Virus record (IMG/VR): IMGVR_UViG_3300028864_000016
Span: 1 to 64,000 of that record
Strand: one strand, 5' to 3'
Length of the DNA stretch: 64,000 nt
Part shown: positions 2,632 to 53,031 of the stretch, piece after piece
Numbering within the stretch: position 1 is the first letter of the stretch
How the letters are laid out: each line of letters opens with the position of its first letter
Notes under the pieces: generated by a model
Told to the model about the DNA's origin: nothing
The model's database searches: none
The model's input: the letters and a program-made list of their open reading frames with translations, nothing else
Made by a program: the position numbers and the translations under genes

Positions 2632-2994
2632 TTAATTACTCATTAATGCTACATCATTCATAACACGTTTACCAAAATCAGTATTTTCAAACCCAATTTT
2701 TTCAGTTCTTTTCAATTCCTTTTTAATTTTTTCTTTATTTATTCTAAGCATATCTTCAATTCCTGTTTCTTCTTTTAATTCAATCTTATCAATTCCATTA
2801 TACAAATACGCTCCACCTAAACAACTCTTATCTTTTATCATTTCTACATTATTGATTTTTAATTTTCCCATTCCATATTTTAAAAATTGTCTAAACACTA
2901 TTTGTATAGAACTTTTTTCAGATTTACTAAATTTTTTAACTGGTTTACCATTCAACCATGCGTAATAATATATTCTATCCATAACATTTACCAC
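2632..2994 (-). CDS. Hypothetical protein
   Basis: ORF preceded by TTGACA-17-TATACT promoter (3054-3082). Confidence 0.7.
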   Translation of the reverse strand: MVNVMDRIYYYAWLNGKPVKKFSKSEKSSIQIVFRQFLKYGMGKLKINNVEMIKDKSCLGGAYLYNGIDKIELKEETGIEDMLRINKEKIKKELKRTEKIGFENTDFGKRVMNDVALMSN

Positions 2995-3322
2995 CTTTTA
3001 ATTTATTTTAATTTATATTGATTATGTATTTTCTCAACGTTTATCTTAATATTAGTATATCAGTTATATAAGGTACTGTCAACAAATTAATGTAATTGTT
3101 TTTAATAAAATAAGTTTTTTAATTGGATATTATTTATTCTATTTATAGGCTCATAGCTGAATTTTACTTATATAGGTGTAATTGTATTCCTTCATCCCTA
3201 ATAGTGCCTTAGAATCCATTCTGACGTTATAATATTGCAGTAAAATTATTTTTTCTTGTAGTAGTTAAAATAATAATAAAAGGAACTATAAAAAATTTTA
3301 TTTATAGTCCCTAAATCTATAT

Positions 3323-4087
3323 TTAATTAAATGACCAATTAGAAATGAATGTACTAGCTGAACCGAAAACAAGTGGGTTTAAATCCTTATAAGAAGAAAC
3401 CTCAAATTTTTCCGAAACATTAAGCCAAAGGTTTTTAAAATATTTTCTTGATTCTGTTTTATATAATTTACTATGTGCTCCACCTAAAATTGTACTTACT
3501 CTTTCTCTAGCTTGTTTTAATAACTTACTAGCTTGATAACTATTTATAGTTGAAACATCAATAAATGAATCTAATTTATTTTGTGTACTTGTTAATTTTT
3601 CTGTATTGTTAGTTATTTCATTTTTTAATTGTGATACTTCATTTTCTAATTTAACTATTTGACCTTTTAAACCAAAATCCTCAGCAAATTGTTCTTTCTG
3701 TTCATCAGTTTCAAAAAATGCTTTATAAAGAACATCTTTGCACTTTAGCTGATAATTTACTAATCTTTCAACCGCTTCTGGGTTTTCTTCTTTCATAGTT
3801 GGAGTTAGCGAAATCTTGGCAAGCCACAAAGTAACATAATATTCATGAATCGCAAATACATTTTGTTGACCTCCATTTGTAGGGAACGTCATATTTGTCA
3901 TACCCTTTGATAAAACCACGTCATTTTTGATATTTTTTATTTGCCTATCTGCTTGACCTATTGTTAATCCAATATCCGTACAAGCTTTCTTTACTCCTAG
4001 CCACACTTCTCCTTTGTTGTCTTTAATTCCTAAAATTTGTCCGCCTTCAAAGTCAATTAATTTTTGTTGTAATTTTTCTTTTTCCAT
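3323..4087 (-). CDS. Phage antirepressor-type protein (P22 Ant N-terminal-like domain, coiled coil, ORF6C-like C-terminus)
   Basis: VWLGVKKAC..IGL; TNGG.Q; LWLAKI; YQLKCKDVL..AF; C-terminal F.VSSYKDL. Confidence 0.8.
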   Translation of the reverse strand: MEKEKLQQKLIDFEGGQILGIKDNKGEVWLGVKKACTDIGLTIGQADRQIKNIKNDVVLSKGMTNMTFPTNGGQQNVFAIHEYYVTLWLAKISLTPTMKEENPEAVERLVNYQLKCKDVLYKAFFETDEQKEQFAEDFGLKGQIVKLENEVSQLKNEITNNTEKLTSTQNKLDSFIDVSTINSYQASKLLKQARERVSTILGGAHSKLYKTESRKYFKNLWLNVSEKFEVSSYKDLNPLVFGSASTFISNWSFN

Positions 4088-44016: not shown

Positions 44017-45258
44017 ATGGAAAAGGTTAAATTTTATGATACAAATGAATTATTACATAGCATAGATGAAATAGAAGGAAAGATATTTTTAAGTTCAATA
44101 ACCCTTCAAGAATTAGAACATATTAAAACTTCAAAAAATAAAGATGAAGATGTTAGATTTGAAGCTAGAAAAGTAACTAGATTTTTAAGAGAAAATCAAG
44201 ATAGTTATGAATGTATAGTTGTTGAAAAGAAACATTATAAACTATTAGATAAAATGAATTTAGAACCTGATAATGATAATTTAATAATTGCTTGTGCTAA
44301 ATTATTAGAGAAATGTTATGATGTAGAATTTTTTACAGATGATATTTGTTGTTATAACATAGCTAAGAATATATTTGATTTAAAATGTAGTGGAATTAAA
44401 TCTAATACAAAAATCGAAACATATAAAGGTTATGTTGAAATCATTATGACAGATGAAGAATTAGCAAAATTTTATGAAAAAGAAAATAAAGAAAACATTT
44501 ATGGATTAGAAATAAATGAGTACTTAATTATAAAAGATACATTAAATCAACCAATTGATGCATGGAAATATATTGGTGATAGATTTGGATTTGTACAAGT
44601 GGACGTAAAGCCTATACAAAGTAAAATGTTAGGTAAGTTGAAAGCCAAAGACTTTTATCAACAATGTGTTCTAGATAGTTTTCAAAACAATACTATAACA
44701 GTAATTAAAGGTAAAGCAGGTAGTGGAAAATCTCATCTAGCTATGAATTTCTTATTTAGTCAAATGGATAAGGGTAAGATTGATAAGATTATAATGTTTG
44801 TTAATCCAGTTGCTACAAGGGGTGCTGTTAAACTAGGTTACTATAAAGGAACTAAAGACGAGAAGCTTTTAGATTCAACTATAGGTGCATTTTTACAAGG
44901 GAAATTGGCTGATAGTCTTAATGTCCAAACACTTATTGGAACAGGAAAGTTATTATTACTTCCTATGAGTGATGTTAGGGGATTTGATACAAGTGGTATG
45001 AATGCAGGTATCTATATTACTGAGGCACAAAATATGAGTATTGACTTAATGAAATTAGCGTTACAAAGAATAGGAGACGATTGTATTGCTATTATTGATG
45101 GTGATGTTGATACACAAGTAGATGATAAGCTATACGAAGGTTCAAATAATGGAATGAGAAGACTTTCAGAAGTGTTTAGAGGACAAGACTTATATGGTGA
45201 AGTTGAGTTAACTGAATGTTATAGAAGTAGAATTGCTAAAATAGCAGAAGAATTATAA
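44017..45258 (+). CDS. phoH: PIN-PhoH fusion protein (PhoH2-like)
   Basis: PIN YDTN..., QELE, DNLII, TDD; PhoH GKAGSGKS, LGYYKG...EK, RGFD, EAQN, DGD..Q.D. Confidence 0.88.
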   Translation: MEKVKFYDTNELLHSIDEIEGKIFLSSITLQELEHIKTSKNKDEDVRFEARKVTRFLRENQDSYECIVVEKKHYKLLDKMNLEPDNDNLIIACAKLLEKCYDVEFFTDDICCYNIAKNIFDLKCSGIKSNTKIETYKGYVEIIMTDEELAKFYEKENKENIYGLEINEYLIIKDTLNQPIDAWKYIGDRFGFVQVDVKPIQSKMLGKLKAKDFYQQCVLDSFQNNTITVIKGKAGSGKSHLAMNFLFSQMDKGKIDKIIMFVNPVATRGAVKLGYYKGTKDEKLLDSTIGAFLQGKLADSLNVQTLIGTGKLLLLPMSDVRGFDTSGMNAGIYITEAQNMSIDLMKLALQRIGDDCIAIIDGDVDTQVDDKLYEGSNNGMRRLSEVFRGQDLYGEVELTECYRSRIAKIAEEL

Positions 45259-45939: not shown

Positions 45940-46176
45940 TTGTTAATGAATATTAAAGTAAAGAGTAAAGGAAGATATAAAATGGTGATGAAATTTGATG
46001 GACGTGAGAGTAATAAATCTAAGAGAAAAAGACATAAGACACAAAAGTGTTCAAGTTGTAAAAATACGCTAGATATAGATACCTATATTGATAGAAATGA
46101 CTTTGATAGAATAAGTGAAGACACTATTATTATATATTGTGAGAAATGTGGAAATGAAGAATTAATTAAATTATAA
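45940..46176 (+). CDS. Small zinc-ribbon protein
   Basis: CSSC...CEKCG; true start probably internal. Confidence 0.55.
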   Translation: MLMNIKVKSKGRYKMVMKFDGRESNKSKRKRHKTQKCSSCKNTLDIDTYIDRNDFDRISEDTIIIYCEKCGNEELIKL

Positions 46177-46203
46177 CAAATTAAATAAAGGTGAGGGAAT
46201 AAT

Positions 46204-47427
46204 ATGGAGGAAAAGTTTAGAAAGTTAGAAAGTGAGTCAAGAGAAAAGTATATACATAGAATGTATTCTAATAAAATACAATTTAATATGATTAATAGAG
46301 AAATTGCAGAAGTAATTAATCAAGAACTTGGAACAGACTTCCAAGAGAGTTATTTCCGTGGTATATATAAAATTTATGAAATTGCATGTTCTGAATGTTT
46401 GGAATCTTTAAAAGGTGACAAAGAAGTAAAAAACAAAATTGATGAAATTGCTGAGTTAATTGGTGAATTAGATGTAAAGAAAATGCTAGTTAGAAATGAT
46501 ACCACTAAACTTAATAAGATAAAAAGAGATTTTGTTAAGACAATTGAAATAGCTAATGATTTAAAAGAATGTATGCTAGAAAATTATACAGACTTTCCTA
46601 AGTTTGAATATGAAATAATAACAGATGTATCAAATAATAAATTAATAGTTCAAGTCAGCGATTGGCACGTGGGTTATGTTATTAATGGATATAAAGGGAA
46701 TTATTACAACTATGAAATTGCAAAGAAAAGACTTAATAAATTGCTAATTGAAATAGACAAAACTTGTATTTTATATAATATTAATTCAGTGGTAGTTGTA
46801 AATTGTGGAGATGCTATAGAAAATCTATATATGCGTAAAAATCAAAGTTATGAATGTGAATTTGATTTATCTCATCAAATAGCATATGCATCAAAATTAT
46901 TATATAGCTTTATAACTCAAATATCATCAAAGAAAAGAAATGTTGAAGTATATTCAGTGGGTGGTAATCATAGCCGATTGAGTGAAAAAGATGCAAATGT
47001 TGAAGGCGATAATGCTAATGTAATTATTAATGAAAACTTAAAAACGTTTGTTGAGATATCTGAAAATAAAAGAATACATATAAATGATATTGATTATGTT
47101 GATGATAGTGCTTATTTTAAAATTAATGGAATGAATGTAAAAGTTATTCATGGAGATAATAGAATTTCAGATAAAAAGAAATTATTTGATTCAGAATCTA
47201 CAATGGACAACACAGAATATAAACTTATTCTAAGGGGGCATGACCATAATTTCAATATAACTTCTCAAAATAATGGGGGATATGTTGTTACAAGTGGTTC
47301 ATTATTTGGATATAATCCTTATTCTGTTAAGAAAATGAGTTGTACTACAAATGCTAGTCAAACATTAATAGTTATTAATGAAAATGATATAGAATGTATC
47401 AAGGATATAAATTTGCAAATAAATTAA
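46204..47427 (+). CDS. Calcineurin-like metallophosphoesterase (YonJ-like)
   Basis: SDWH.G, CGD, GGNH, IHGD, GHDH. Confidence 0.85.
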   Translation: MEEKFRKLESESREKYIHRMYSNKIQFNMINREIAEVINQELGTDFQESYFRGIYKIYEIACSECLESLKGDKEVKNKIDEIAELIGELDVKKMLVRNDTTKLNKIKRDFVKTIEIANDLKECMLENYTDFPKFEYEIITDVSNNKLIVQVSDWHVGYVINGYKGNYYNYEIAKKRLNKLLIEIDKTCILYNINSVVVVNCGDAIENLYMRKNQSYECEFDLSHQIAYASKLLYSFITQISSKKRNVEVYSVGGNHSRLSEKDANVEGDNANVIINENLKTFVEISENKRIHINDIDYVDDSAYFKINGMNVKVIHGDNRISDKKKLFDSESTMDNTEYKLILRGHDHNFNITSQNNGGYVVTSGSLFGYNPYSVKKMSCTTNASQTLIVINENDIECIKDINLQIN

Positions 47428-47447
47428 TTAAAATAACGAGGTGTAAT

Positions 47448-47612
47448 ATGAATACAAAAATCATAGTAAATCCAACTATAGCAAGACAACTTTTACACAA
47501 AGGACATGCTATAGTAGATATTAAACCTAAAAAAGAAAATAAAAAAGAAACTGTTTTTGTATTTGAAAATACAGAGCAATTTAAGAATGATTTGACTTCT
47601 ATTAGTAAATAG
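47448..47612 (+). CDS. DUF5659-like small protein
   Basis: ARQLL.KG..IVDIKP...TVFVFENT; GAGGTG RBS before ATG 47448. Confidence 0.7.
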   Translation: MNTKIIVNPTIARQLLHKGHAIVDIKPKKENKKETVFVFENTEQFKNDLTSISK

Positions 47613-47650
47613 GAGTCTTTTTATTATAAAAAATTCATAGAAAGAAGGAA

Positions 47651-48667
47651 TTGATAACAATGAAAATAGGAAATTTAGAAGTGTATGGTATCATATATAA
47701 AATAGAAAATTTTGTCAATGGTAAAGTTTATATTGGACAAACTATAAATGGGTTTGATAAGAGATATCCTTATAATGGAGTTGATATTGAAAGAGTTTAT
47801 AATTATTCTATTTATAATAAAAATAATTACAGAAATTATAATGACCATTTATTTAAATCAATTAAAAAATATGGATTTGATTCTTTTCAGATTAATAAAG
47901 TGTTTGATATGGCATTTTCACAAGACGAACTAAATATTAAAGAACAGTGTTGGATAAAATATTACAATTCTGCAAATGGAAATTATGGTTATAATAATGA
48001 TGAAGGTGGAAATAGTGGGATTCCTAACAATGAAGCAAGAGAAAATATGAGAAATGCACAAATTAAAATTCCAATTATTCAATTAGATTTAAAAGGAAAT
48101 CTAATAAATGAATGGTCTGGAGCAAGAGAAGTTTCTAAAAAATTAAATATTAATCAATCTTGTATATGGGAATGTTTAAACAAAGGAAGGAAAACTTATA
48201 AGGGATATATTTGGATATATAAAACTGAATATTATGAATTAAATAAGAAAGTAGATTTAGATTTTTATACTTTTAATAAAGGACAAAAGATAGAAATTGT
48301 ACAATTTGATTTTCAAAGAAATATAATTAAAGTATGGGATAGTGCATTATCCATAGAAAAAGAAACTAATGGATGTTTTGATGCAAGCACAATAATAAAA
48401 GTATGTAAACATAAATTATTATCTAGTAAAGAATATATATTTTTATATAATAAAGGCAATATTAATGAAGAATTTATAAATCATATAAATATATATAATA
48501 AGTCACACAAGAAAAAAGTAGTTTTTCAATTATATGATAATAAACTAATTAAGATATGGAAGAGTGTAAAAGAAATGGTTATAAATTTTAATGATACGTC
48601 TATATATAATAAATTAAATGAAAATAAAGAAATATTAAAGGATAATATCTTTACATATGAAATTTAA
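47651..48667 (+). CDS. GIY-YIG homing endonuclease with NUMOD1-like repeats
   Basis: GIIYKIEN..NGKVYIGQT, KYG...F, E..WI..Y.S...GYN...GG. Confidence 0.9.
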   Translation: MITMKIGNLEVYGIIYKIENFVNGKVYIGQTINGFDKRYPYNGVDIERVYNYSIYNKNNYRNYNDHLFKSIKKYGFDSFQINKVFDMAFSQDELNIKEQCWIKYYNSANGNYGYNNDEGGNSGIPNNEARENMRNAQIKIPIIQLDLKGNLINEWSGAREVSKKLNINQSCIWECLNKGRKTYKGYIWIYKTEYYELNKKVDLDFYTFNKGQKIEIVQFDFQRNIIKVWDSALSIEKETNGCFDASTIIKVCKHKLLSSKEYIFLYNKGNINEEFINHINIYNKSHKKKVVFQLYDNKLIKIWKSVKEMVINFNDTSIYNKLNENKEILKDNIFTYEI

Positions 48668-48775
48668 CATAGTGTAGATAAACTTCAATGTACAACACAT
48701 GCAAGTCAAACTCTAATTGTAGTTAATTATGATGGAGTTGAATATATAAGAGATATAAATTTACAGATAAATTAA
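48668..48775 (+). pseudogene. Orphan duplicate of the last 35 codons of the metallophosphoesterase gene
   Basis: HSVDKLQCTTHASQTLIVVNYDGVEYIRDINLQIN* vs YSVKKMSCTTNASQTLIVINENDIECIKDINLQIN* (47320-47427). Confidence 0.85.
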
Positions 48776-48797
48776 AATAAATAGTAAAGGGTTAAAG

Positions 48798-49403
48798 GTG
48801 AATTATATGGGAGAGTATCAAATAGTAAATAGATTGCTAGAAGAAATGAAAAGATTAGATTATCTTAATGATAATACTATATACCTTGATTGTGAAATAG
48901 ATAGGGAATCCCAAGTAATGTTTTGTAGGCAGTTAAGAAAATTAGCAGTTCAGGAATTAAATAAACCAGAAAAAGATAGAAAACATATAAAAGTTAGAAT
49001 ATCAAGTTTTGGTGGTTGGGTATGTGCGGTTTTCGCAATGATATCTGATATGGAATATTGGCAAGAACAAGGTATAATAGTTGAAACTTATTGTGATGGA
49101 TATACAGCAAGTGGAGGTAGTAAAATACTTATGGCAGGAAGTAAAGGGTATAGATTTATAACTAGATATGCAACAGTATTAATTCATCAATCTAATAGCT
49201 ATAAACAAGGTCAATCAACATTACAGGAAGACATCGTAGAAGTTAGAGAATCTTTAAAAGATTGGGATACAATTTGTAATATATTTAGAAAACATACCAA
49301 ATTAACTGAAGAAGATATTTTTAATTATACTGATAAGAATGTTAATTTTACTTACAGACCACAAGAATGTCTTGATAAAGGCATAGTGGATAAAATAATA
49401 TAA
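48798..49403 (+). CDS. ClpP-like protease subunit
   Basis: ISSFGG.V, TASGGS (Ser), RF...ATVLIHQ (His), E.L..GIVDKI; catalytic Asp position unclear. Confidence 0.8.
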   Translation: MNYMGEYQIVNRLLEEMKRLDYLNDNTIYLDCEIDRESQVMFCRQLRKLAVQELNKPEKDRKHIKVRISSFGGWVCAVFAMISDMEYWQEQGIIVETYCDGYTASGGSKILMAGSKGYRFITRYATVLIHQSNSYKQGQSTLQEDIVEVRESLKDWDTICNIFRKHTKLTEEDIFNYTDKNVNFTYRPQECLDKGIVDKII

Positions 49404-49411
49404 GGATATAG

Positions 49412-49756
49412 GTGAGAAATATGAATGAAGAATTAAATCAAGAACAAGAAGTGATGGAAGATGACTATATTGGTTATGAAGAACAAATGGGATTAGTTTC
49501 TGTAGATGAAGAGTTAAAAAGAATAGTTATTCAAGATAATCCTACATCTGAAACAAGTGAATATACCACGAACAGTGATTTCTACCAAGAAAATATGATT
49601 TATATAGAAACTATAGGTGAATGTTTTCAAAAATTAATTGGGTATGGTATTGATTATAATAATGCAGTTAGTATTTCTAATAATGTATATCAAAATTCAG
49701 TTAATGAAAAGTTAGCAAAGATTCAACAAATTGTAGTAGAACAGAATCAACCATAA
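49412..49756 (+). CDS. Acidic hypothetical protein
   Basis: ORF in operon. Confidence 0.65.
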   Translation: MRNMNEELNQEQEVMEDDYIGYEEQMGLVSVDEELKRIVIQDNPTSETSEYTTNSDFYQENMIYIETIGECFQKLIGYGIDYNNAVSISNNVYQNSVNEKLAKIQQIVVEQNQP

Positions 49757-51705: not shown

Positions 51706-51894
51706 ATGGAAAAGAAATATTTCAAGGTAGATTCTTTAAGTTTGGCAAGAGCTATGAATTATTTATGTTATAATTTTATGAAATTTGAGTTAGATGGGAA
51801 GACGGTTTATAGTTTTGAAGATACCGAAGAATTTAGAAAAGATTTAAAAATATTAAATGGATTAAGAAAGAAAAATAATAAATATAATAAATAG
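51706..51894 (+). CDS. DUF5659-like small protein
   Basis: SL.LA.A..YL...TVYSFEDTEEF; own promoter. Confidence 0.65.
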   Translation: MEKKYFKVDSLSLARAMNYLCYNFMKFELDGKTVYSFEDTEEFRKDLKILNGLRKKNNKYNK

Positions 51895-51951: not shown

Positions 51952-53031
51952 ATGGGAAAAGGACAACCGTGGTTGACAGAAGATGAAGAATTTTTAAGAG
52001 AAAATTACATAGAATTATCCAAAGAAGAATTAATGAAGAGATTCAATACAAGAACTTGGAAGGGAATAAAACATAAAGCCAATGATATGGGAATAAAGAA
52101 ACAAAATAATTATGAAGATATTCCATTTGATGAATTATATGAAATAGAAAATGGAATAAAATATAAAAAGTGCAAATGTTGTAGACGATATTTGCCATTT
52201 GAAATGACATATTTTCCAAAGGATAATGCTTGTATTGATGGTTTCAGACATATTTGTAAAGAATGTAAGGGAGAAAATTTTGGATTGTCTAATGCTATTG
52301 ATTGGACGGATAAAGATGTAAAATTATTAAAAGAAATTTATTCTGATATGATTAATGAAGATATTATAAAAGAATATTTTCCAAATAGAAAATTAAAACA
52401 TTTAACTGATAAAGCATGGAAATTAGATTTAAAGAAAACCAAAGATATCTTACAACAAAGTAGATTGATGAGTGATGAAGGTAGAATTAAGGTGTCAAAT
52501 GCTAGAAAATCAGAAGGGTACTTTAATGGCGAAAATAATCCAATGTTTGGGTCTGCTAGGTTTGGAAGTCTAAACCCTAATTATAAGGGTGGTATTAGTA
52601 ATATAGAAAATGAGTTAAGAAGAAATTTAAATCAATGGAAAATAGATAGTATGAAAGATTGTAATTTCAAATGTATTTTCACAGGAGAAAGATTTGACCA
52701 TATTCATCATTTATATAGTTTTGATAGTATAGTTATAGATACTTTACAAGAATTAAATATTCCAATATATGAAAATATAAGTAATTATACAGATGTAGAA
52801 TTAAAACAGATTATAAATAGATGTATAGAAATCCACTATAGATATCCATTAGGAAAATGTATGAAAGAAGAATATCATAAAATATTTCATCAAAATTATG
52901 GATATGGAACAAATACACCTAGTCAATTTGATGAATTTTTAATTAGATTCTTTAATGGAGAATTCGATGAGCAATTAGAAGAAGAATATAGAAGTAATAA
53001 AATATTAGAAAATTTAAAAGTCGCTAATTAA
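51952..53031 (+). CDS. HNH-type putative homing endonuclease with Myb-like repeats, Zn finger and NUMOD3-like motif
   Basis: W..E...L..Y repeats; CKCC..CKEC; GENNPM/NPNYKGG; HIHHL...H..FH..YG. Confidence 0.75.
   Translation: MGKGQPWLTEDEEFLRENYIELSKEELMKRFNTRTWKGIKHKANDMGIKKQNNYEDIPFDELYEIENGIKYKKCKCCRRYLPFEMTYFPKDNACIDGFRHICKECKGENFGLSNAIDWTDKDVKLLKEIYSDMINEDIIKEYFPNRKLKHLTDKAWKLDLKKTKDILQQSRLMSDEGRIKVSNARKSEGYFNGENNPMFGSARFGSLNPNYKGGISNIENELRRNLNQWKIDSMKDCNFKCIFTGERFDHIHHLYSFDSIVIDTLQELNIPIYENISNYTDVELKQIINRCIEIHYRYPLGKCMKEEYHKIFHQNYGYGTNTPSQFDEFLIRFFNGEFDEQLEEEYRSNKILENLKVAN

What the first reader, a model, noticed from the sequence alone, without database searches (positions are those of the whole stretch)
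47320..48775. GIY-YIG cassette replaced the 3' end of its target gene, leaving the old end stranded
The last 35 codons of the phosphoesterase occur twice: in frame (47320-47427) and, diverged, starting at the base right after the GIY-YIG stop (48668-48775). Inference: a cassette [new 3' end + DUF5659-like gene + endonuclease] inserted into the gene and repaired it with a recoded, presumably cleavage-resistant tail. This is a splicing-free way to invade a coding sequence.
Basis: partly seen in the sequence, partly recalled or inferred. Interest (0 to 1): 0.65.

Follow-up and report, generated by a model that had tools for sequence, protein, structure and literature searches.

The report
Homing-endonuclease cassette stranded a gene's tail
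In this large Clostridium-type phage, a selfish nuclease cassette arrived with about 870 bases of another phage's exonuclease gene, overwrote most of the resident gene and left its last 35 codons as an orphan behind the nuclease, a layout known from fungal mitochondria and yeast that I found no report of in phages.

Summary
Codons 373-407 of the exonuclease gene (47320-47427) recur at 48668-48775: 23/35 residues, 70% of bases, directly after the GIY-YIG stop.

The gene is a chimera. Bases 46175 to about 46555 are "type B" (87-95% to cassette-free contig L010). Bases 46558-47427 are "type A" (82-95% to cassette-free L006). The switch lies between 46552 and 46558 (Fisher p 9e-46). The stranded tail is type B (33/35 to native ends), and homology to type-B empty alleles restarts at 48669 and runs on into the ClpP-like gene. 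So codons 119-407 plus the cassette were imported.

The new tail is not "recoded". It is the natural type-A allele, which also occurs without any cassette.

A second phage (L072) carries a different GIY-YIG gene behind the same small-gene module. Its stranded type-B tail starts at the same nucleotide, which points to a site-specific break in the Tyr373 codon.

Related cassettes elsewhere sit between the two genes with no stranded tail.

The mechanism matches intronless homing with co-conversion. The layout matches fungal mitochondrial mobile ORFs and yeast WHO elements. Cleavage and allele resistance are untested.

The parts
46204..47427 (+). Chimeric exonuclease / metallophosphatase gene (407 aa, YonJ-like, phrog_284)
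   Evidence: Pfam Metallophos 25.7 bits (cut-off 21.5); phrog_284 'exonuclease' E 7.6e-69. 104 homologs found. Segment-wise identities show it is a hybrid of two clades.
46175..46555 (+). Type-B (resident) 5' part of the gene, codons 1 to about 118, with 29 bases of leader
   Evidence: 87-95% base identity to L010 (the contig of P0006) against 30-55% to L006. Nearest proteins are P0006 at 87% and P0013 at 84%. Informative sites left of the break: 105 B to 13 A.
46558..47427 (+). Imported type-A 3' part of the gene, codons about 119-407, including the in-frame tail 47320-47427
   Evidence: 82-95% identity to cassette-free L006 and L005, against 45-70% to L010. Nearest proteins are P0001 at 91% (tail 97%) and P0002 at 86%. 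Informative sites right of the break: 253 A to 48 B; best break between 46552 and 46558, Fisher p 9e-46. The crossover lies in a stretch conserved in both clades (46443-46562).
47433..47650 (+). Small-gene module: DUF5659-like ORF 47448-47612 (54 aa), terminator-like hairpin 47594-47617, and a shared ribosome-binding leader (GAAGGA, about 47643-47648) for the nuclease ORF
   Evidence: Pfam DUF5659 22.0 bits, below the 23.6 cut-off. The module is 90% identical in bases to L066 (47429-47651) and 92% to L072 (47426-47662), although the flanking genes differ. The alignment of four contexts shows the hairpin and leader conserved and divergence starting at the nuclease start codon. Hairpin. AlphaFold model pLDDT 88, beta-alpha-beta-beta-alpha, with no significant PDB match.
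47651..48667 (+). Free-standing GIY-YIG homing endonuclease gene (338 aa from TTG 47651; 335 aa from ATG 47660) with NUMOD1-type DNA-binding repeats
   Evidence: Matches the I-TevI catalytic domain (1mk0/1ln0, E 0.006-0.009) with the GIY, YIG, Arg and Glu positions aligned. NUMOD1 23.0 bits, cut-off 22.8. PHROG homing-endonuclease families score down to E 7.9e-14. The gene is absent from empty alleles. The nearest non-self relative is 56% identical and sits behind a distant exonuclease gene in L025.
48668..48668 (+). Junction base (C where native genes have T)
   Evidence: In L072 the equivalent base is G.
48669..48775 (+). Stranded native (type-B) last 35 codons of the old gene, with no start codon of its own and in frame with the nuclease ORF behind its TAA
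   Evidence: 33/35 residues match the in-frame ends of P0006 and P0082. There are 6 base differences from the L010 tail over 108 bases, counting base 48668 (4 synonymous codons, 2 non-synonymous including the junction codon). Homology to L010/L011/L012/L013/L017 starts at 48669.
48776..49403 (+). Native downstream context: short leader and ClpP-like protease gene (48798-49403)
   Evidence: Pfam CLP_protease E 1.2e-24. L010 aligns collinearly over 48669-49632. The protein is 53% identical to the ClpP-like proteins of type-B contigs but only 26-27% to those next to type-A genes.

Best explanation
The locus is the scar of one non-reciprocal recombination event, associated with a homing endonuclease, between two related SPbeta-like (YonJ-encoding) large phages.

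The resident phage carried a type-B exonuclease gene followed directly by its ClpP-like gene. A co-infecting donor carried a type-A exonuclease gene followed by a two-part cassette: a DUF5659-like small gene with a hairpin and a ribosome-binding leader, then a free-standing GIY-YIG homing endonuclease.

Inferred sequence of events. A double-strand break was made in the resident gene at or next to the Tyr373 codon (CCTT|ATAGTG). The left end was resected about 800 bases and invaded the donor in a stretch conserved in both types (46443-46562). Repair synthesis then copied the donor's codons 119-407, the small gene and the nuclease gene. No usable homology lay beyond the cassette, because the ClpP-like genes are only about 26% identical in protein. 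The copied strand was therefore joined without homology to the untouched right end of the break.

Result: an intact hybrid exonuclease gene (B head, A body and tail), the cassette, and then the resident gene's last 35 codons as a non-coding orphan, followed by the resident ClpP-like gene.

Shown: the chimera, both junctions, the identities of the two tails, empty alleles of both types in the same metagenomes, and a second independent cassette with the same right junction. Inferred: that the nuclease made the break, that the break lies at the junction, and that the type-A tail is not cut.
For: Chimera: the segment identities and 419 informative sites switch between 46552 and 46558 (105 B:13 A on the left, 48 B:253 A on the right, p 9e-46).

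Old end: tail B is 33/35 identical to native type-B ends and differs from L010 at 6 of 108 bases. Homology restarts exactly at 48669 and is collinear into the ClpP-like gene.

The head and the orphan tail have the same nearest relatives (P0006, P0012, P0013, P0027, P0028), whose middle part is only about 50% identical to the window's.

Poor right-hand homology: the ClpP-like protein is 53% identical to type-B contexts and 26% to type-A contexts.

Empty alleles of both types exist. Several come from the same samples as the occupied allele: L011 and L013 are from sample 3300028864, the sample of the window's own record.

The cassette's usual home is the gap between the two genes. L055 has exonuclease, small gene (62%), another GIY-YIG gene, then the ClpP-like gene 43 bases later. 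L025 and L066 are similar as far as their contigs reach.

Second case, L072/L102: a hybrid exonuclease gene with a B-like head and a foreign body, the same small-gene module (92% in bases), and a different GIY-YIG gene (32% over 100 aa, in the catalytic domain only). Its stranded type-B tail begins at the same nucleotide, ATAGTG.

The nuclease looks intact and is identical in at least 24 contigs.

[quoted passage not shown] 2003, cited in PMC10448857), and nuclease genes at the boundaries of genetic exchange between phages (PMC10448857).
Against: No type-A donor carrying this cassette was found in the collections searched.

No cleavage data exist, and the break could lie anywhere between codons 119 and 373.

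Two nucleases with unrelated DNA-binding regions giving the same junction is unexpected if each cuts on its own. This fits equally well with a junction inherited through a stranded-tail homology arm, as in WHO elements.

The region upstream of 46175 does not match the type-B contigs, and PhoH synteny resembles L006. The resident background is therefore itself mosaic, and 'type-B phage' is defined only by this gene and the ClpP-like gene.

No microhomology can be demonstrated at the right junction, because the donor sequence is unknown.
Confidence: 0.7

Rival explanations
1. WHO/mORF-type obligate design. The mobile unit is [resistant gene 3' part + small gene + nuclease + stranded tail]. The stranded tail is a working right-hand homology arm. 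Each homing event cuts a type-B gene at the Tyr373 codon, the right end pairs with the donor's stranded tail, and the junction is re-created at the same nucleotide while the tail sequence stays that of the new host.
For: The window and L072 share an identical junction nucleotide, yet each tail is closer to a different native type-B gene than to the other. The window's tail differs from L010 at 6 of 108 bases. L072's tail is 100% identical in protein to P0028. By my count from the two sequences printed, the two orphan tails are about 88% identical to each other in bases. This is exactly the model proposed for WHO elements (PMC7282813) and the layout of mitochondrial mobile ORFs (PMC3630166).
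Against: The two nuclease ORFs differ right up to the junction, so one cannot have replaced the other by homologous exchange. Related cassettes in the same slot have no stranded tail (L055; L025 and L066 as far as their contigs reach). The imported gene parts differ (type A in the window, a different 338-aa type in L072) and the left junctions differ.
Confidence: 0.2
2. Ordinary phage mosaicism. Illegitimate and homologous recombination between co-infecting relatives produced the hybrid, and the nuclease gene is only a passenger at a module border.
For: The gene family is mosaic in general. For example, P0082 has a type-A-like extreme N-terminus (first 77 or so residues) with type-B sequence from about residue 78 and a type-B tail. 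The regions flanking the gene are mosaic too.
Against: The recipient-side junction could fall at more than 1000 positions, yet it is the same nucleotide in two independent cassettes. Nothing comparable occurs elsewhere in the 218-kb genome. In both cases a nuclease gene sits exactly at the boundary.
Confidence: 0.07
3. Local tandem duplication of the gene's 3' end, later divergence of the two copies, and insertion of the cassette between them.
For: Two copies on the same strand, 1348 bases apart.
Against: Each copy is far closer to a different set of natural alleles (A: 87-92% to L005/L006; B: 6 differences in 108 bases from L010) than to the other copy (70%). The gene switches clade at 46555. 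The orphan shows no decay: no stop codon or frameshift, and most differences from its relatives are synonymous.
Confidence: 0.01
4. Assembly chimera that joins two co-occurring phage strains.
For: Type-A, type-B and occupied alleles co-occur in the same metagenomes.
Against: The same 3.6-kb arrangement is 100% identical in contigs from many samples and three assembly sources, including 64-256 kb contigs.
Confidence: 0.02

Closest known systems
Mobile endonuclease ORFs (mORFs) with C-terminal duplication in fungal mitochondria: Allomyces macrogynus atp6 (Paquin, Laforest and Lang 1994), and Glomus atp6/atp9/cox2/nad3 (Beaudet et al. 2013, PMC3630166)
   Same: An endonuclease ORF lies behind a gene whose in-frame 3' end is foreign, while the native 3' end lies stranded downstream. 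The native copy clusters with close relatives and the inserted copy clusters elsewhere. The two duplicates are only 64-81% identical to each other, compared with 70% here.
   Different: The host is a bacteriophage, not an organelle. The imported tract here is about 290 codons, much longer than the duplicated part. The nuclease is a separate gene behind a small companion gene, not fused in phase with the host gene. Related cassettes in the same slot lack any duplication.
WHO elements of Torulaspora and Lachancea yeasts, which replace the 3' end of FBA1 (Coughlan et al. 2020, PMC7282813)
   Same: Splicing-free homing into a coding gene. The result is a chimeric gene (old 5' end, donor 3' end), a stranded old 3' fragment downstream of the endonuclease gene, and discordant 5' and 3' phylogenies. 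The fragment starts at the cleavage position.
   Different: WHO proteins are intein-derived LAGLIDADG-type enzymes acting in meiosis. Allele-specific cleavage was shown experimentally there and is untested here. No cluster of successive fragments is seen here; there is a single orphan.
[quoted passage not shown] 2003, as cited in PMC10448857). The details of SegG biology are from my own knowledge.
   Same: A free-standing GIY-YIG gene lies between genes. The inferred cut is inside the neighbouring conserved gene of the nuclease-less phage. Hundreds of bases of flanking gene are converted along with the nuclease gene.
   Different: In the T4 cases both flanks recombine homologously and no orphan fragment remains. 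Here the right-hand join is abrupt and leaves 107 bases of the old gene.
Nuclease genes at boundaries of genetic exchange between phages (Barth et al. 2023, PMC10448857)
   Same: A homing endonuclease gene sits exactly at the border between segments of different ancestry.
   Different: In the term searches I ran on that paper (C-terminal, duplication, truncated, remnant, co-conversion, chimeric), no stranded gene end or duplicated 3' end turned up.

Membership tests
GIY-YIG homing endonucleases (I-TevI / Seg-like, free-standing) | N-terminal GIY-YIG catalytic domain with the conserved Tyr, Tyr, Arg, Glu and Asn positions | tested here: met
   phmmer match to the I-TevI catalytic domain (1mk0/1ln0, E 0.006-0.009) with GIY (YGIIY), YIG (VYIGQ), Arg (DKRY) and Glu (IKEQ) aligned. 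PHROG homing-endonuclease families match, including phrog_5123 'with GIY-YIG motif'. Pfam PF01541 itself did not score at E 0.01 or better.
GIY-YIG homing endonucleases (I-TevI / Seg-like, free-standing) | C-terminal modular DNA-binding region (NUMOD / helix-turn-helix modules) | tested here: met
   NUMOD1 23.0 bits against a cut-off of 22.8. The I-HmuI NUMOD-like match is below its cut-off.
GIY-YIG homing endonucleases (I-TevI / Seg-like, free-standing) | Present or absent among otherwise collinear relatives | tested here: met
   Empty alleles: L005-L007, L010-L018, L043-L054, L056. Occupied alleles: the window, L025, L055, L066, L072.
GIY-YIG homing endonucleases (I-TevI / Seg-like, free-standing) | Site-specific cleavage of the nuclease-less allele and biased inheritance | not testable with these tools
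   Only indirect evidence: the same recipient-side junction nucleotide in two cassettes.
3'-end-replacing homing elements (mitochondrial mORFs, yeast WHO elements) | Duplicated gene 3' end flanking the endonuclease gene, with the in-frame copy foreign and the downstream copy native | tested here: met
3'-end-replacing homing elements (mitochondrial mORFs, yeast WHO elements) | Chimeric host gene with discordant ancestry of its 5' and 3' parts | tested here: met
   Break at 46552/46558, p 9e-46.
3'-end-replacing homing elements (mitochondrial mORFs, yeast WHO elements) | The replacement 3' end and the stranded fragment are integral parts of the element wherever it occurs | tested here: not met
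   L055 has the small gene and a GIY-YIG gene between an intact exonuclease gene and the ClpP-like gene with no fragment. L025 and L066 show a ribosome-binding site and start codon right after the nuclease stop. The borders of the small-gene module coincide with gene borders.
3'-end-replacing homing elements (mitochondrial mORFs, yeast WHO elements) | Allele-specific cleavage: the old 3' end is sensitive and the new 3' end is resistant | not testable with these tools
   The sequences differ at 10 of the 20 bases right after the junction (alignment), but no assay was possible.
DUF5659 (PF18903) | Score above Pfam's gathering cut-off | tested here: not met
   22.0 bits against a cut-off of 23.6, and 22.6 bits in the genome scan. 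Precomputed Pfam lists flag the L025 homolog and a separate small gene in the P0228 contig (weak) as DUF5659. I call the window's gene 'DUF5659-like' only.
Calcineurin-like metallophosphatase / phage exonuclease (YonJ-like, phrog_284) | Metallophos domain with conserved metal-binding motifs, full length | tested here: met
   PF00149 25.7 bits against a cut-off of 21.5; phrog_284 E 7.6e-69 over residues 44-405. The invariant D153, H155, D203, N255, H256, H346 and H348 are retained in the hybrid.

The most novel reading that the evidence does not exclude
The DUF5659-like module (small gene, hairpin and ribosome-binding leader) may be a conserved docking platform behind the exonuclease gene into which unrelated nuclease ORFs (three GIY-YIG types, HNH types and zinc-finger/HTH types) are exchanged precisely from the start codon onward. 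In addition, phages may possess a true WHO-like homing system in which the stranded gene tail serves as the right-hand homology arm and the imported gene body confers resistance. The shared junction in the Tyr373 codon would then be the first cleavage site of such a system readable directly from metagenomes.
Probability: 0.2. Interest if true: 0.75.

Novelty: new member of a known kind. Interest (0 to 1): 0.55.

Why it matters
It gives a clean, base-resolved natural record of a homing-endonuclease event in a phage: which DNA was donor, which was recipient, how far the conversion ran, and where the recipient end was. Such records are normally erased because both flanks recombine homologously.

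It shows that a free-standing nuclease cassette can overwrite most of an essential-looking DNA-repair gene and create a functional-looking hybrid. That is one concrete route to the mosaic genes seen throughout phage genomes.

It extends a layout known from fungal mitochondria and yeast chromosomes to bacteriophages.

It also supplies a directly testable prediction: a cut in the Tyr373 codon of type-B genes, with type A resistant. And it flags an uncharacterised small protein family as a regular companion of phage homing endonucleases.

Tried and rejected
- **GenBank phages.** No close relative of the locus: blastn gave one 242-base hit, and the best tblastn identity for the exonuclease was about 35%. 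No empty allele came from there.
- **Search for the type-A donor carrying this cassette.** None found. The nuclease's closest non-self relative is 56% identical. Contexts of the small-gene homologs never show a type-A gene upstream.
- **Pattern scans for further stranded type-B tails with a non-native preceding base.** The scan of viral contigs returned the window's phage type and the contig of L072. The scan of metagenome contigs returned only the window's own record and a contig identical to L072.
- **Genome-wide search for other stranded gene ends next to nucleases in the 218-kb genome.** None.
- **Nuclease relatives at about 40% identity.** They lie in other loci (tail tape-measure region), so they say nothing about this site.
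- **Function of the small protein.** The AlphaFold model is confident (pLDDT 88), but Foldseek against the PDB gave nothing better than E 0.1. No paper mentions DUF5659. Its function stays open.
- **Apparent weak similarity between the last 25 bases of the nuclease ORF and the gene sequence upstream of the junction.** I judged this to be chance in a 26% G+C genome, because the nuclease's C-terminus is the natural end of its last DNA-binding repeat.
- **An I-TevI-type CNNNG cleavage motif at the junction.** Not present there. A CAATG lies 17 bases downstream, but cutting there would not leave bases 48669-48688 in place.
- **Microhomology at the right junction.** It cannot be assessed without the donor sequence.
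- **Tandem duplication and assembly artefact.** Both rejected (see rival explanations).
Full report
**Setting.** The window is the first 64 kb of a 218,173-base viral record, 25.8% G+C and estimated 88% complete. The genes around the finding are as follows:
- a PIN-PhoH fusion (44017-45258);
- small ORFs;
- a 407-aa metallophosphatase, phrog_284 'exonuclease' (46204-47427). Pfam's YonJ_N family is recorded for this gene in the identical contigs;
- a 54-aa DUF5659-like ORF (47448-47612);
- a 338-aa GIY-YIG/NUMOD1 nuclease (47651-48667);
- a ClpP-like protease gene (48798-49403).

Relatives carry SPbeta-type families (YonJ, YonK, YonG, YomN, YomU). Host clues point to Clostridium: one homolog is named from C. 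butyricum, and the contig of L005 carries a protein named from C. beijerinckii.

**The observation.** They share 23/35 residues (E 1e-16) and 70% of bases, spaced 1348 bases apart. It is the only diverged local duplicate of this kind in the whole genome. The second copy follows the nuclease's TAA directly and is in the same frame. The arrangement is identical in at least 24 contigs from many samples and three assembly sources, so it is a real and stable genome structure.

**Which copy is native.** The exonuclease has 104 detectable homologs, and their C-terminal ends fall into types.
- The in-frame tail ('A') is 33-34/35 identical to P0001 and P0002.
- The orphan tail ('B') is 33/35 identical to P0006 and P0082, and 31-32/35 to P0012, P0013, P0027 and P0028, where it is the in-frame end.

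Cassette-free alleles of both types were recovered with their flanks.
- Type A: L005, L006 and L007, in which the exonuclease stop is followed at once by a ClpP-like gene.
- Type B: L010-L018 and many IMG/VR loci.

**The gene is a chimera.** Sliding comparisons settle it.
- Residues 1 to about 118 are type B: 84-93% identical to P0006 and up to 100% to P0013 in places, but only 12-53% to type A over the first 90 or so residues and 73% in the conserved stretch that ends this segment.
- Residues 119-407 are type A: 83-100% to P0001 and 23-60% to type B over most of the segment, rising to 70-83% in a few conserved windows.
- In bases, 46175-46555 is 87-95% identical to L010, and 46558-47427 is 82-95% identical to L006.
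- Of 419 sites that distinguish L006 from L010, the window follows B at 105 of 118 sites left of the break and A at 253 of 301 sites right of it. The best break lies between 46552 and 46558 (Fisher p 9e-46), inside a stretch conserved in both types (46443-46562).
- By segment, the head and the orphan tail share the same nearest relatives (P0006, P0012, P0013, P0027, P0028), whose middle part is only about 50% identical to the window's. The body and the in-frame tail share P0001 and P0002.

After the cassette, homology to every type-B empty allele restarts exactly at 48669 and runs collinearly through the ClpP-like gene into the next gene (L010: 48669-49632). The orphan differs from the L010 tail at 6 of 108 bases: four synonymous codons, one Val/Leu change and the junction codon. 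The ClpP-like protein is 53% identical to those of type-B contigs and 26-27% to those beside type-A genes.

A type-B gene was therefore overwritten from codon 119 onward by a 2.1-kb foreign patch. The patch comprises 870 bases of type-A gene, then 1240 bases holding the small gene and the nuclease gene. Only the last 35 codons of the old gene survive, pushed behind the patch.

**What the cassette is.** The nuclease aligns with the I-TevI catalytic domain with the key residues in place, and it has NUMOD1 repeats.

The small gene belongs to a sharply bounded module. Bases 47429-47651 are 90% identical to L066, and 47426-47662 are 92% identical to L072, although the upstream exonuclease genes there are only distantly related and the downstream nucleases differ (HNH in L066, another GIY-YIG in L072). 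An alignment of four contexts shows a conserved hairpin with a T-run (47594-47617) and a common ribosome-binding leader. Divergence begins at the nuclease start codon.

Among the small-gene homologs of 57% identity or more that were found with flanks, the next ORF is always nuclease-like: several GIY-YIG types, HNH_2, HNH_3, and zinc-finger/HTH proteins with NUMOD-like ends. More distant homologs are followed by coiled-coil proteins instead.

In L055 the pair sits between an intact exonuclease gene and the ClpP-like gene with no orphan fragment. In L025 and L066 a ribosome-binding site and start codon follow the nuclease stop directly.

The usual state is therefore a free-standing cassette in the gap between the two genes. 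The 'new 3' end' is flanking donor DNA carried along with it, not a built-in part.

**A second, independent case.** L072 (identical to L102) carries the following:
- a hybrid 338-aa exonuclease gene with a B-like N-terminus and a foreign body;
- the same small-gene module;
- a different GIY-YIG gene, 32% identical over 100 aa in the catalytic domain only;
- fused in frame to that gene's end, a type-B tail that is 100% identical in protein to P0028.

Homology to native genes begins at ATAGTG, the same nucleotide as window 48669. The base before it is G in L072, C in the window and T in native genes.

The left junctions differ: about codon 25-60 in L072 against codon 118 in the window. By my count from the sequences, the two orphan tails are about 88% identical to each other, and each is closer to a different native gene. 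Degenerate pattern scans of the viral and metagenome collections found only these two types.

A recipient-side junction that could fall at more than a thousand positions, yet falls on the same base twice, is not chance. Either it marks a site-specific break in type-B genes, or it is inherited through a stranded-tail homology arm.

**Mechanism.** The best reading is intronless homing with long one-sided co-conversion:
1. a break at or near the Tyr373 codon of a type-B gene;
2. resection and strand invasion in the conserved stretch around 46500;
3. copying of the donor's gene body, tail and cassette;
4. a non-homologous join to the right end, because the donor's ClpP-like gene offers no homology.

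The junction lies exactly where the two types change from conserved (the GYNPY codons) to divergent sequence, with 10 of the next 20 bases differing. That fits a recognition site in the type-B-specific stretch and makes resistance of type A plausible.

Shown: structure, ancestry and junctions. Inferred: who made the break, where it was, and resistance.

The main rival is the WHO-like model, in which the orphan tail is a functional homology arm. It explains the shared junction well. It does not explain the unrelated nuclease ORFs abutting that junction, or the tail-less cassettes.

**Comparison with known systems.** The layout is that of mitochondrial mobile ORFs with C-terminal duplication (Paquin et al. 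1994; PMC3630166) and of yeast WHO elements (PMC7282813). The mechanism is closest to T4 Seg-type intronless homing with co-conversion (Liu et al. 2003), and it agrees with nuclease genes marking exchange boundaries in phages (PMC10448857). My literature searches turned up no phage example with a stranded gene end, though the library is incomplete. I therefore rate it a new member of a known kind.

**Limits.** No donor was found and no biochemistry was possible. The type-B contigs closest to the window (L010-L012) are short. The background upstream of 46175 is itself mosaic.

Noticed in passing
window 51706-51894 and 51952-53031; G000 93614-93766 with 93794-94735 (L062): There are two more pairs of a small DUF5659-like ORF followed by a larger ORF in the same genome. 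One pair has a 62-aa ORF (phmmer E 0.0024 to the cassette's small protein) ahead of a 359-aa Cys/His-rich ORF with no Pfam hit. The other has a DUF5659-like stretch (20.6 bits) just ahead of a second GIY-YIG gene.
   Followed up: partly
G000 93794-94735 (L062 1681-2622) versus window 47651-48667: The paralogous GIY-YIG gene shares a near-identical catalytic domain (44% identity overall, far higher in the first 120 or so residues) but has a different C-terminal DNA-binding region. This looks like domain shuffling between nucleases of one genome.
   Followed up: partly
window 47594-47617: A terminator-like hairpin with a T-run overlaps the stop of the small ORF, about 25 bases before the nuclease's ribosome-binding site. 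It is conserved in all four contexts aligned. It may limit or time nuclease expression.
   Followed up: partly
L034 1879-8002, L035, L036 3501-4736: Nuclease relatives at about 40% identity sit between a 496-582-aa PhageMin_Tail ORF and a 1240-1276-aa ORF. The tail tape-measure gene appears to be split by a homing endonuclease gene.
   Followed up: no
L072 2370-3167: Here the stranded exonuclease tail has no stop codon in front of it, so the nuclease would be made with 34 residues of exonuclease C-terminus fused to its end. In the window the tail is also in the nuclease's frame, but behind a TAA.
   Followed up: partly
L074 2247-3423: The exonuclease homolog upstream of the small gene matches in two frames (2247-2870 and 2866-3423). 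This is a possible frameshift or split gene.
   Followed up: no
L063-L065 4501-5730: A 73%-identical small-gene homolog lies behind a Beta-CASP nuclease gene. It is followed by a YonK-like gene and then a 99-aa T5orf172/MUG113 fragment, which may be a decayed nuclease.
   Followed up: no
window 44017-45258: A 413-aa PIN_4 and PhoH fusion protein (phrog_2765) lies upstream of the locus. It is 77% identical in bases to L006, so the upstream synteny is of the type-A contig kind.
   Followed up: no
G000 188371-191933 (minus strand): A tandem pair of long paralogs (646 and 525 aa, about 35% identical). The first has a GIY-YIG-like N-terminal match.
   Followed up: no
window 1-64000: ARAGORN finds no tRNA genes in the window.
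   Followed up: yes
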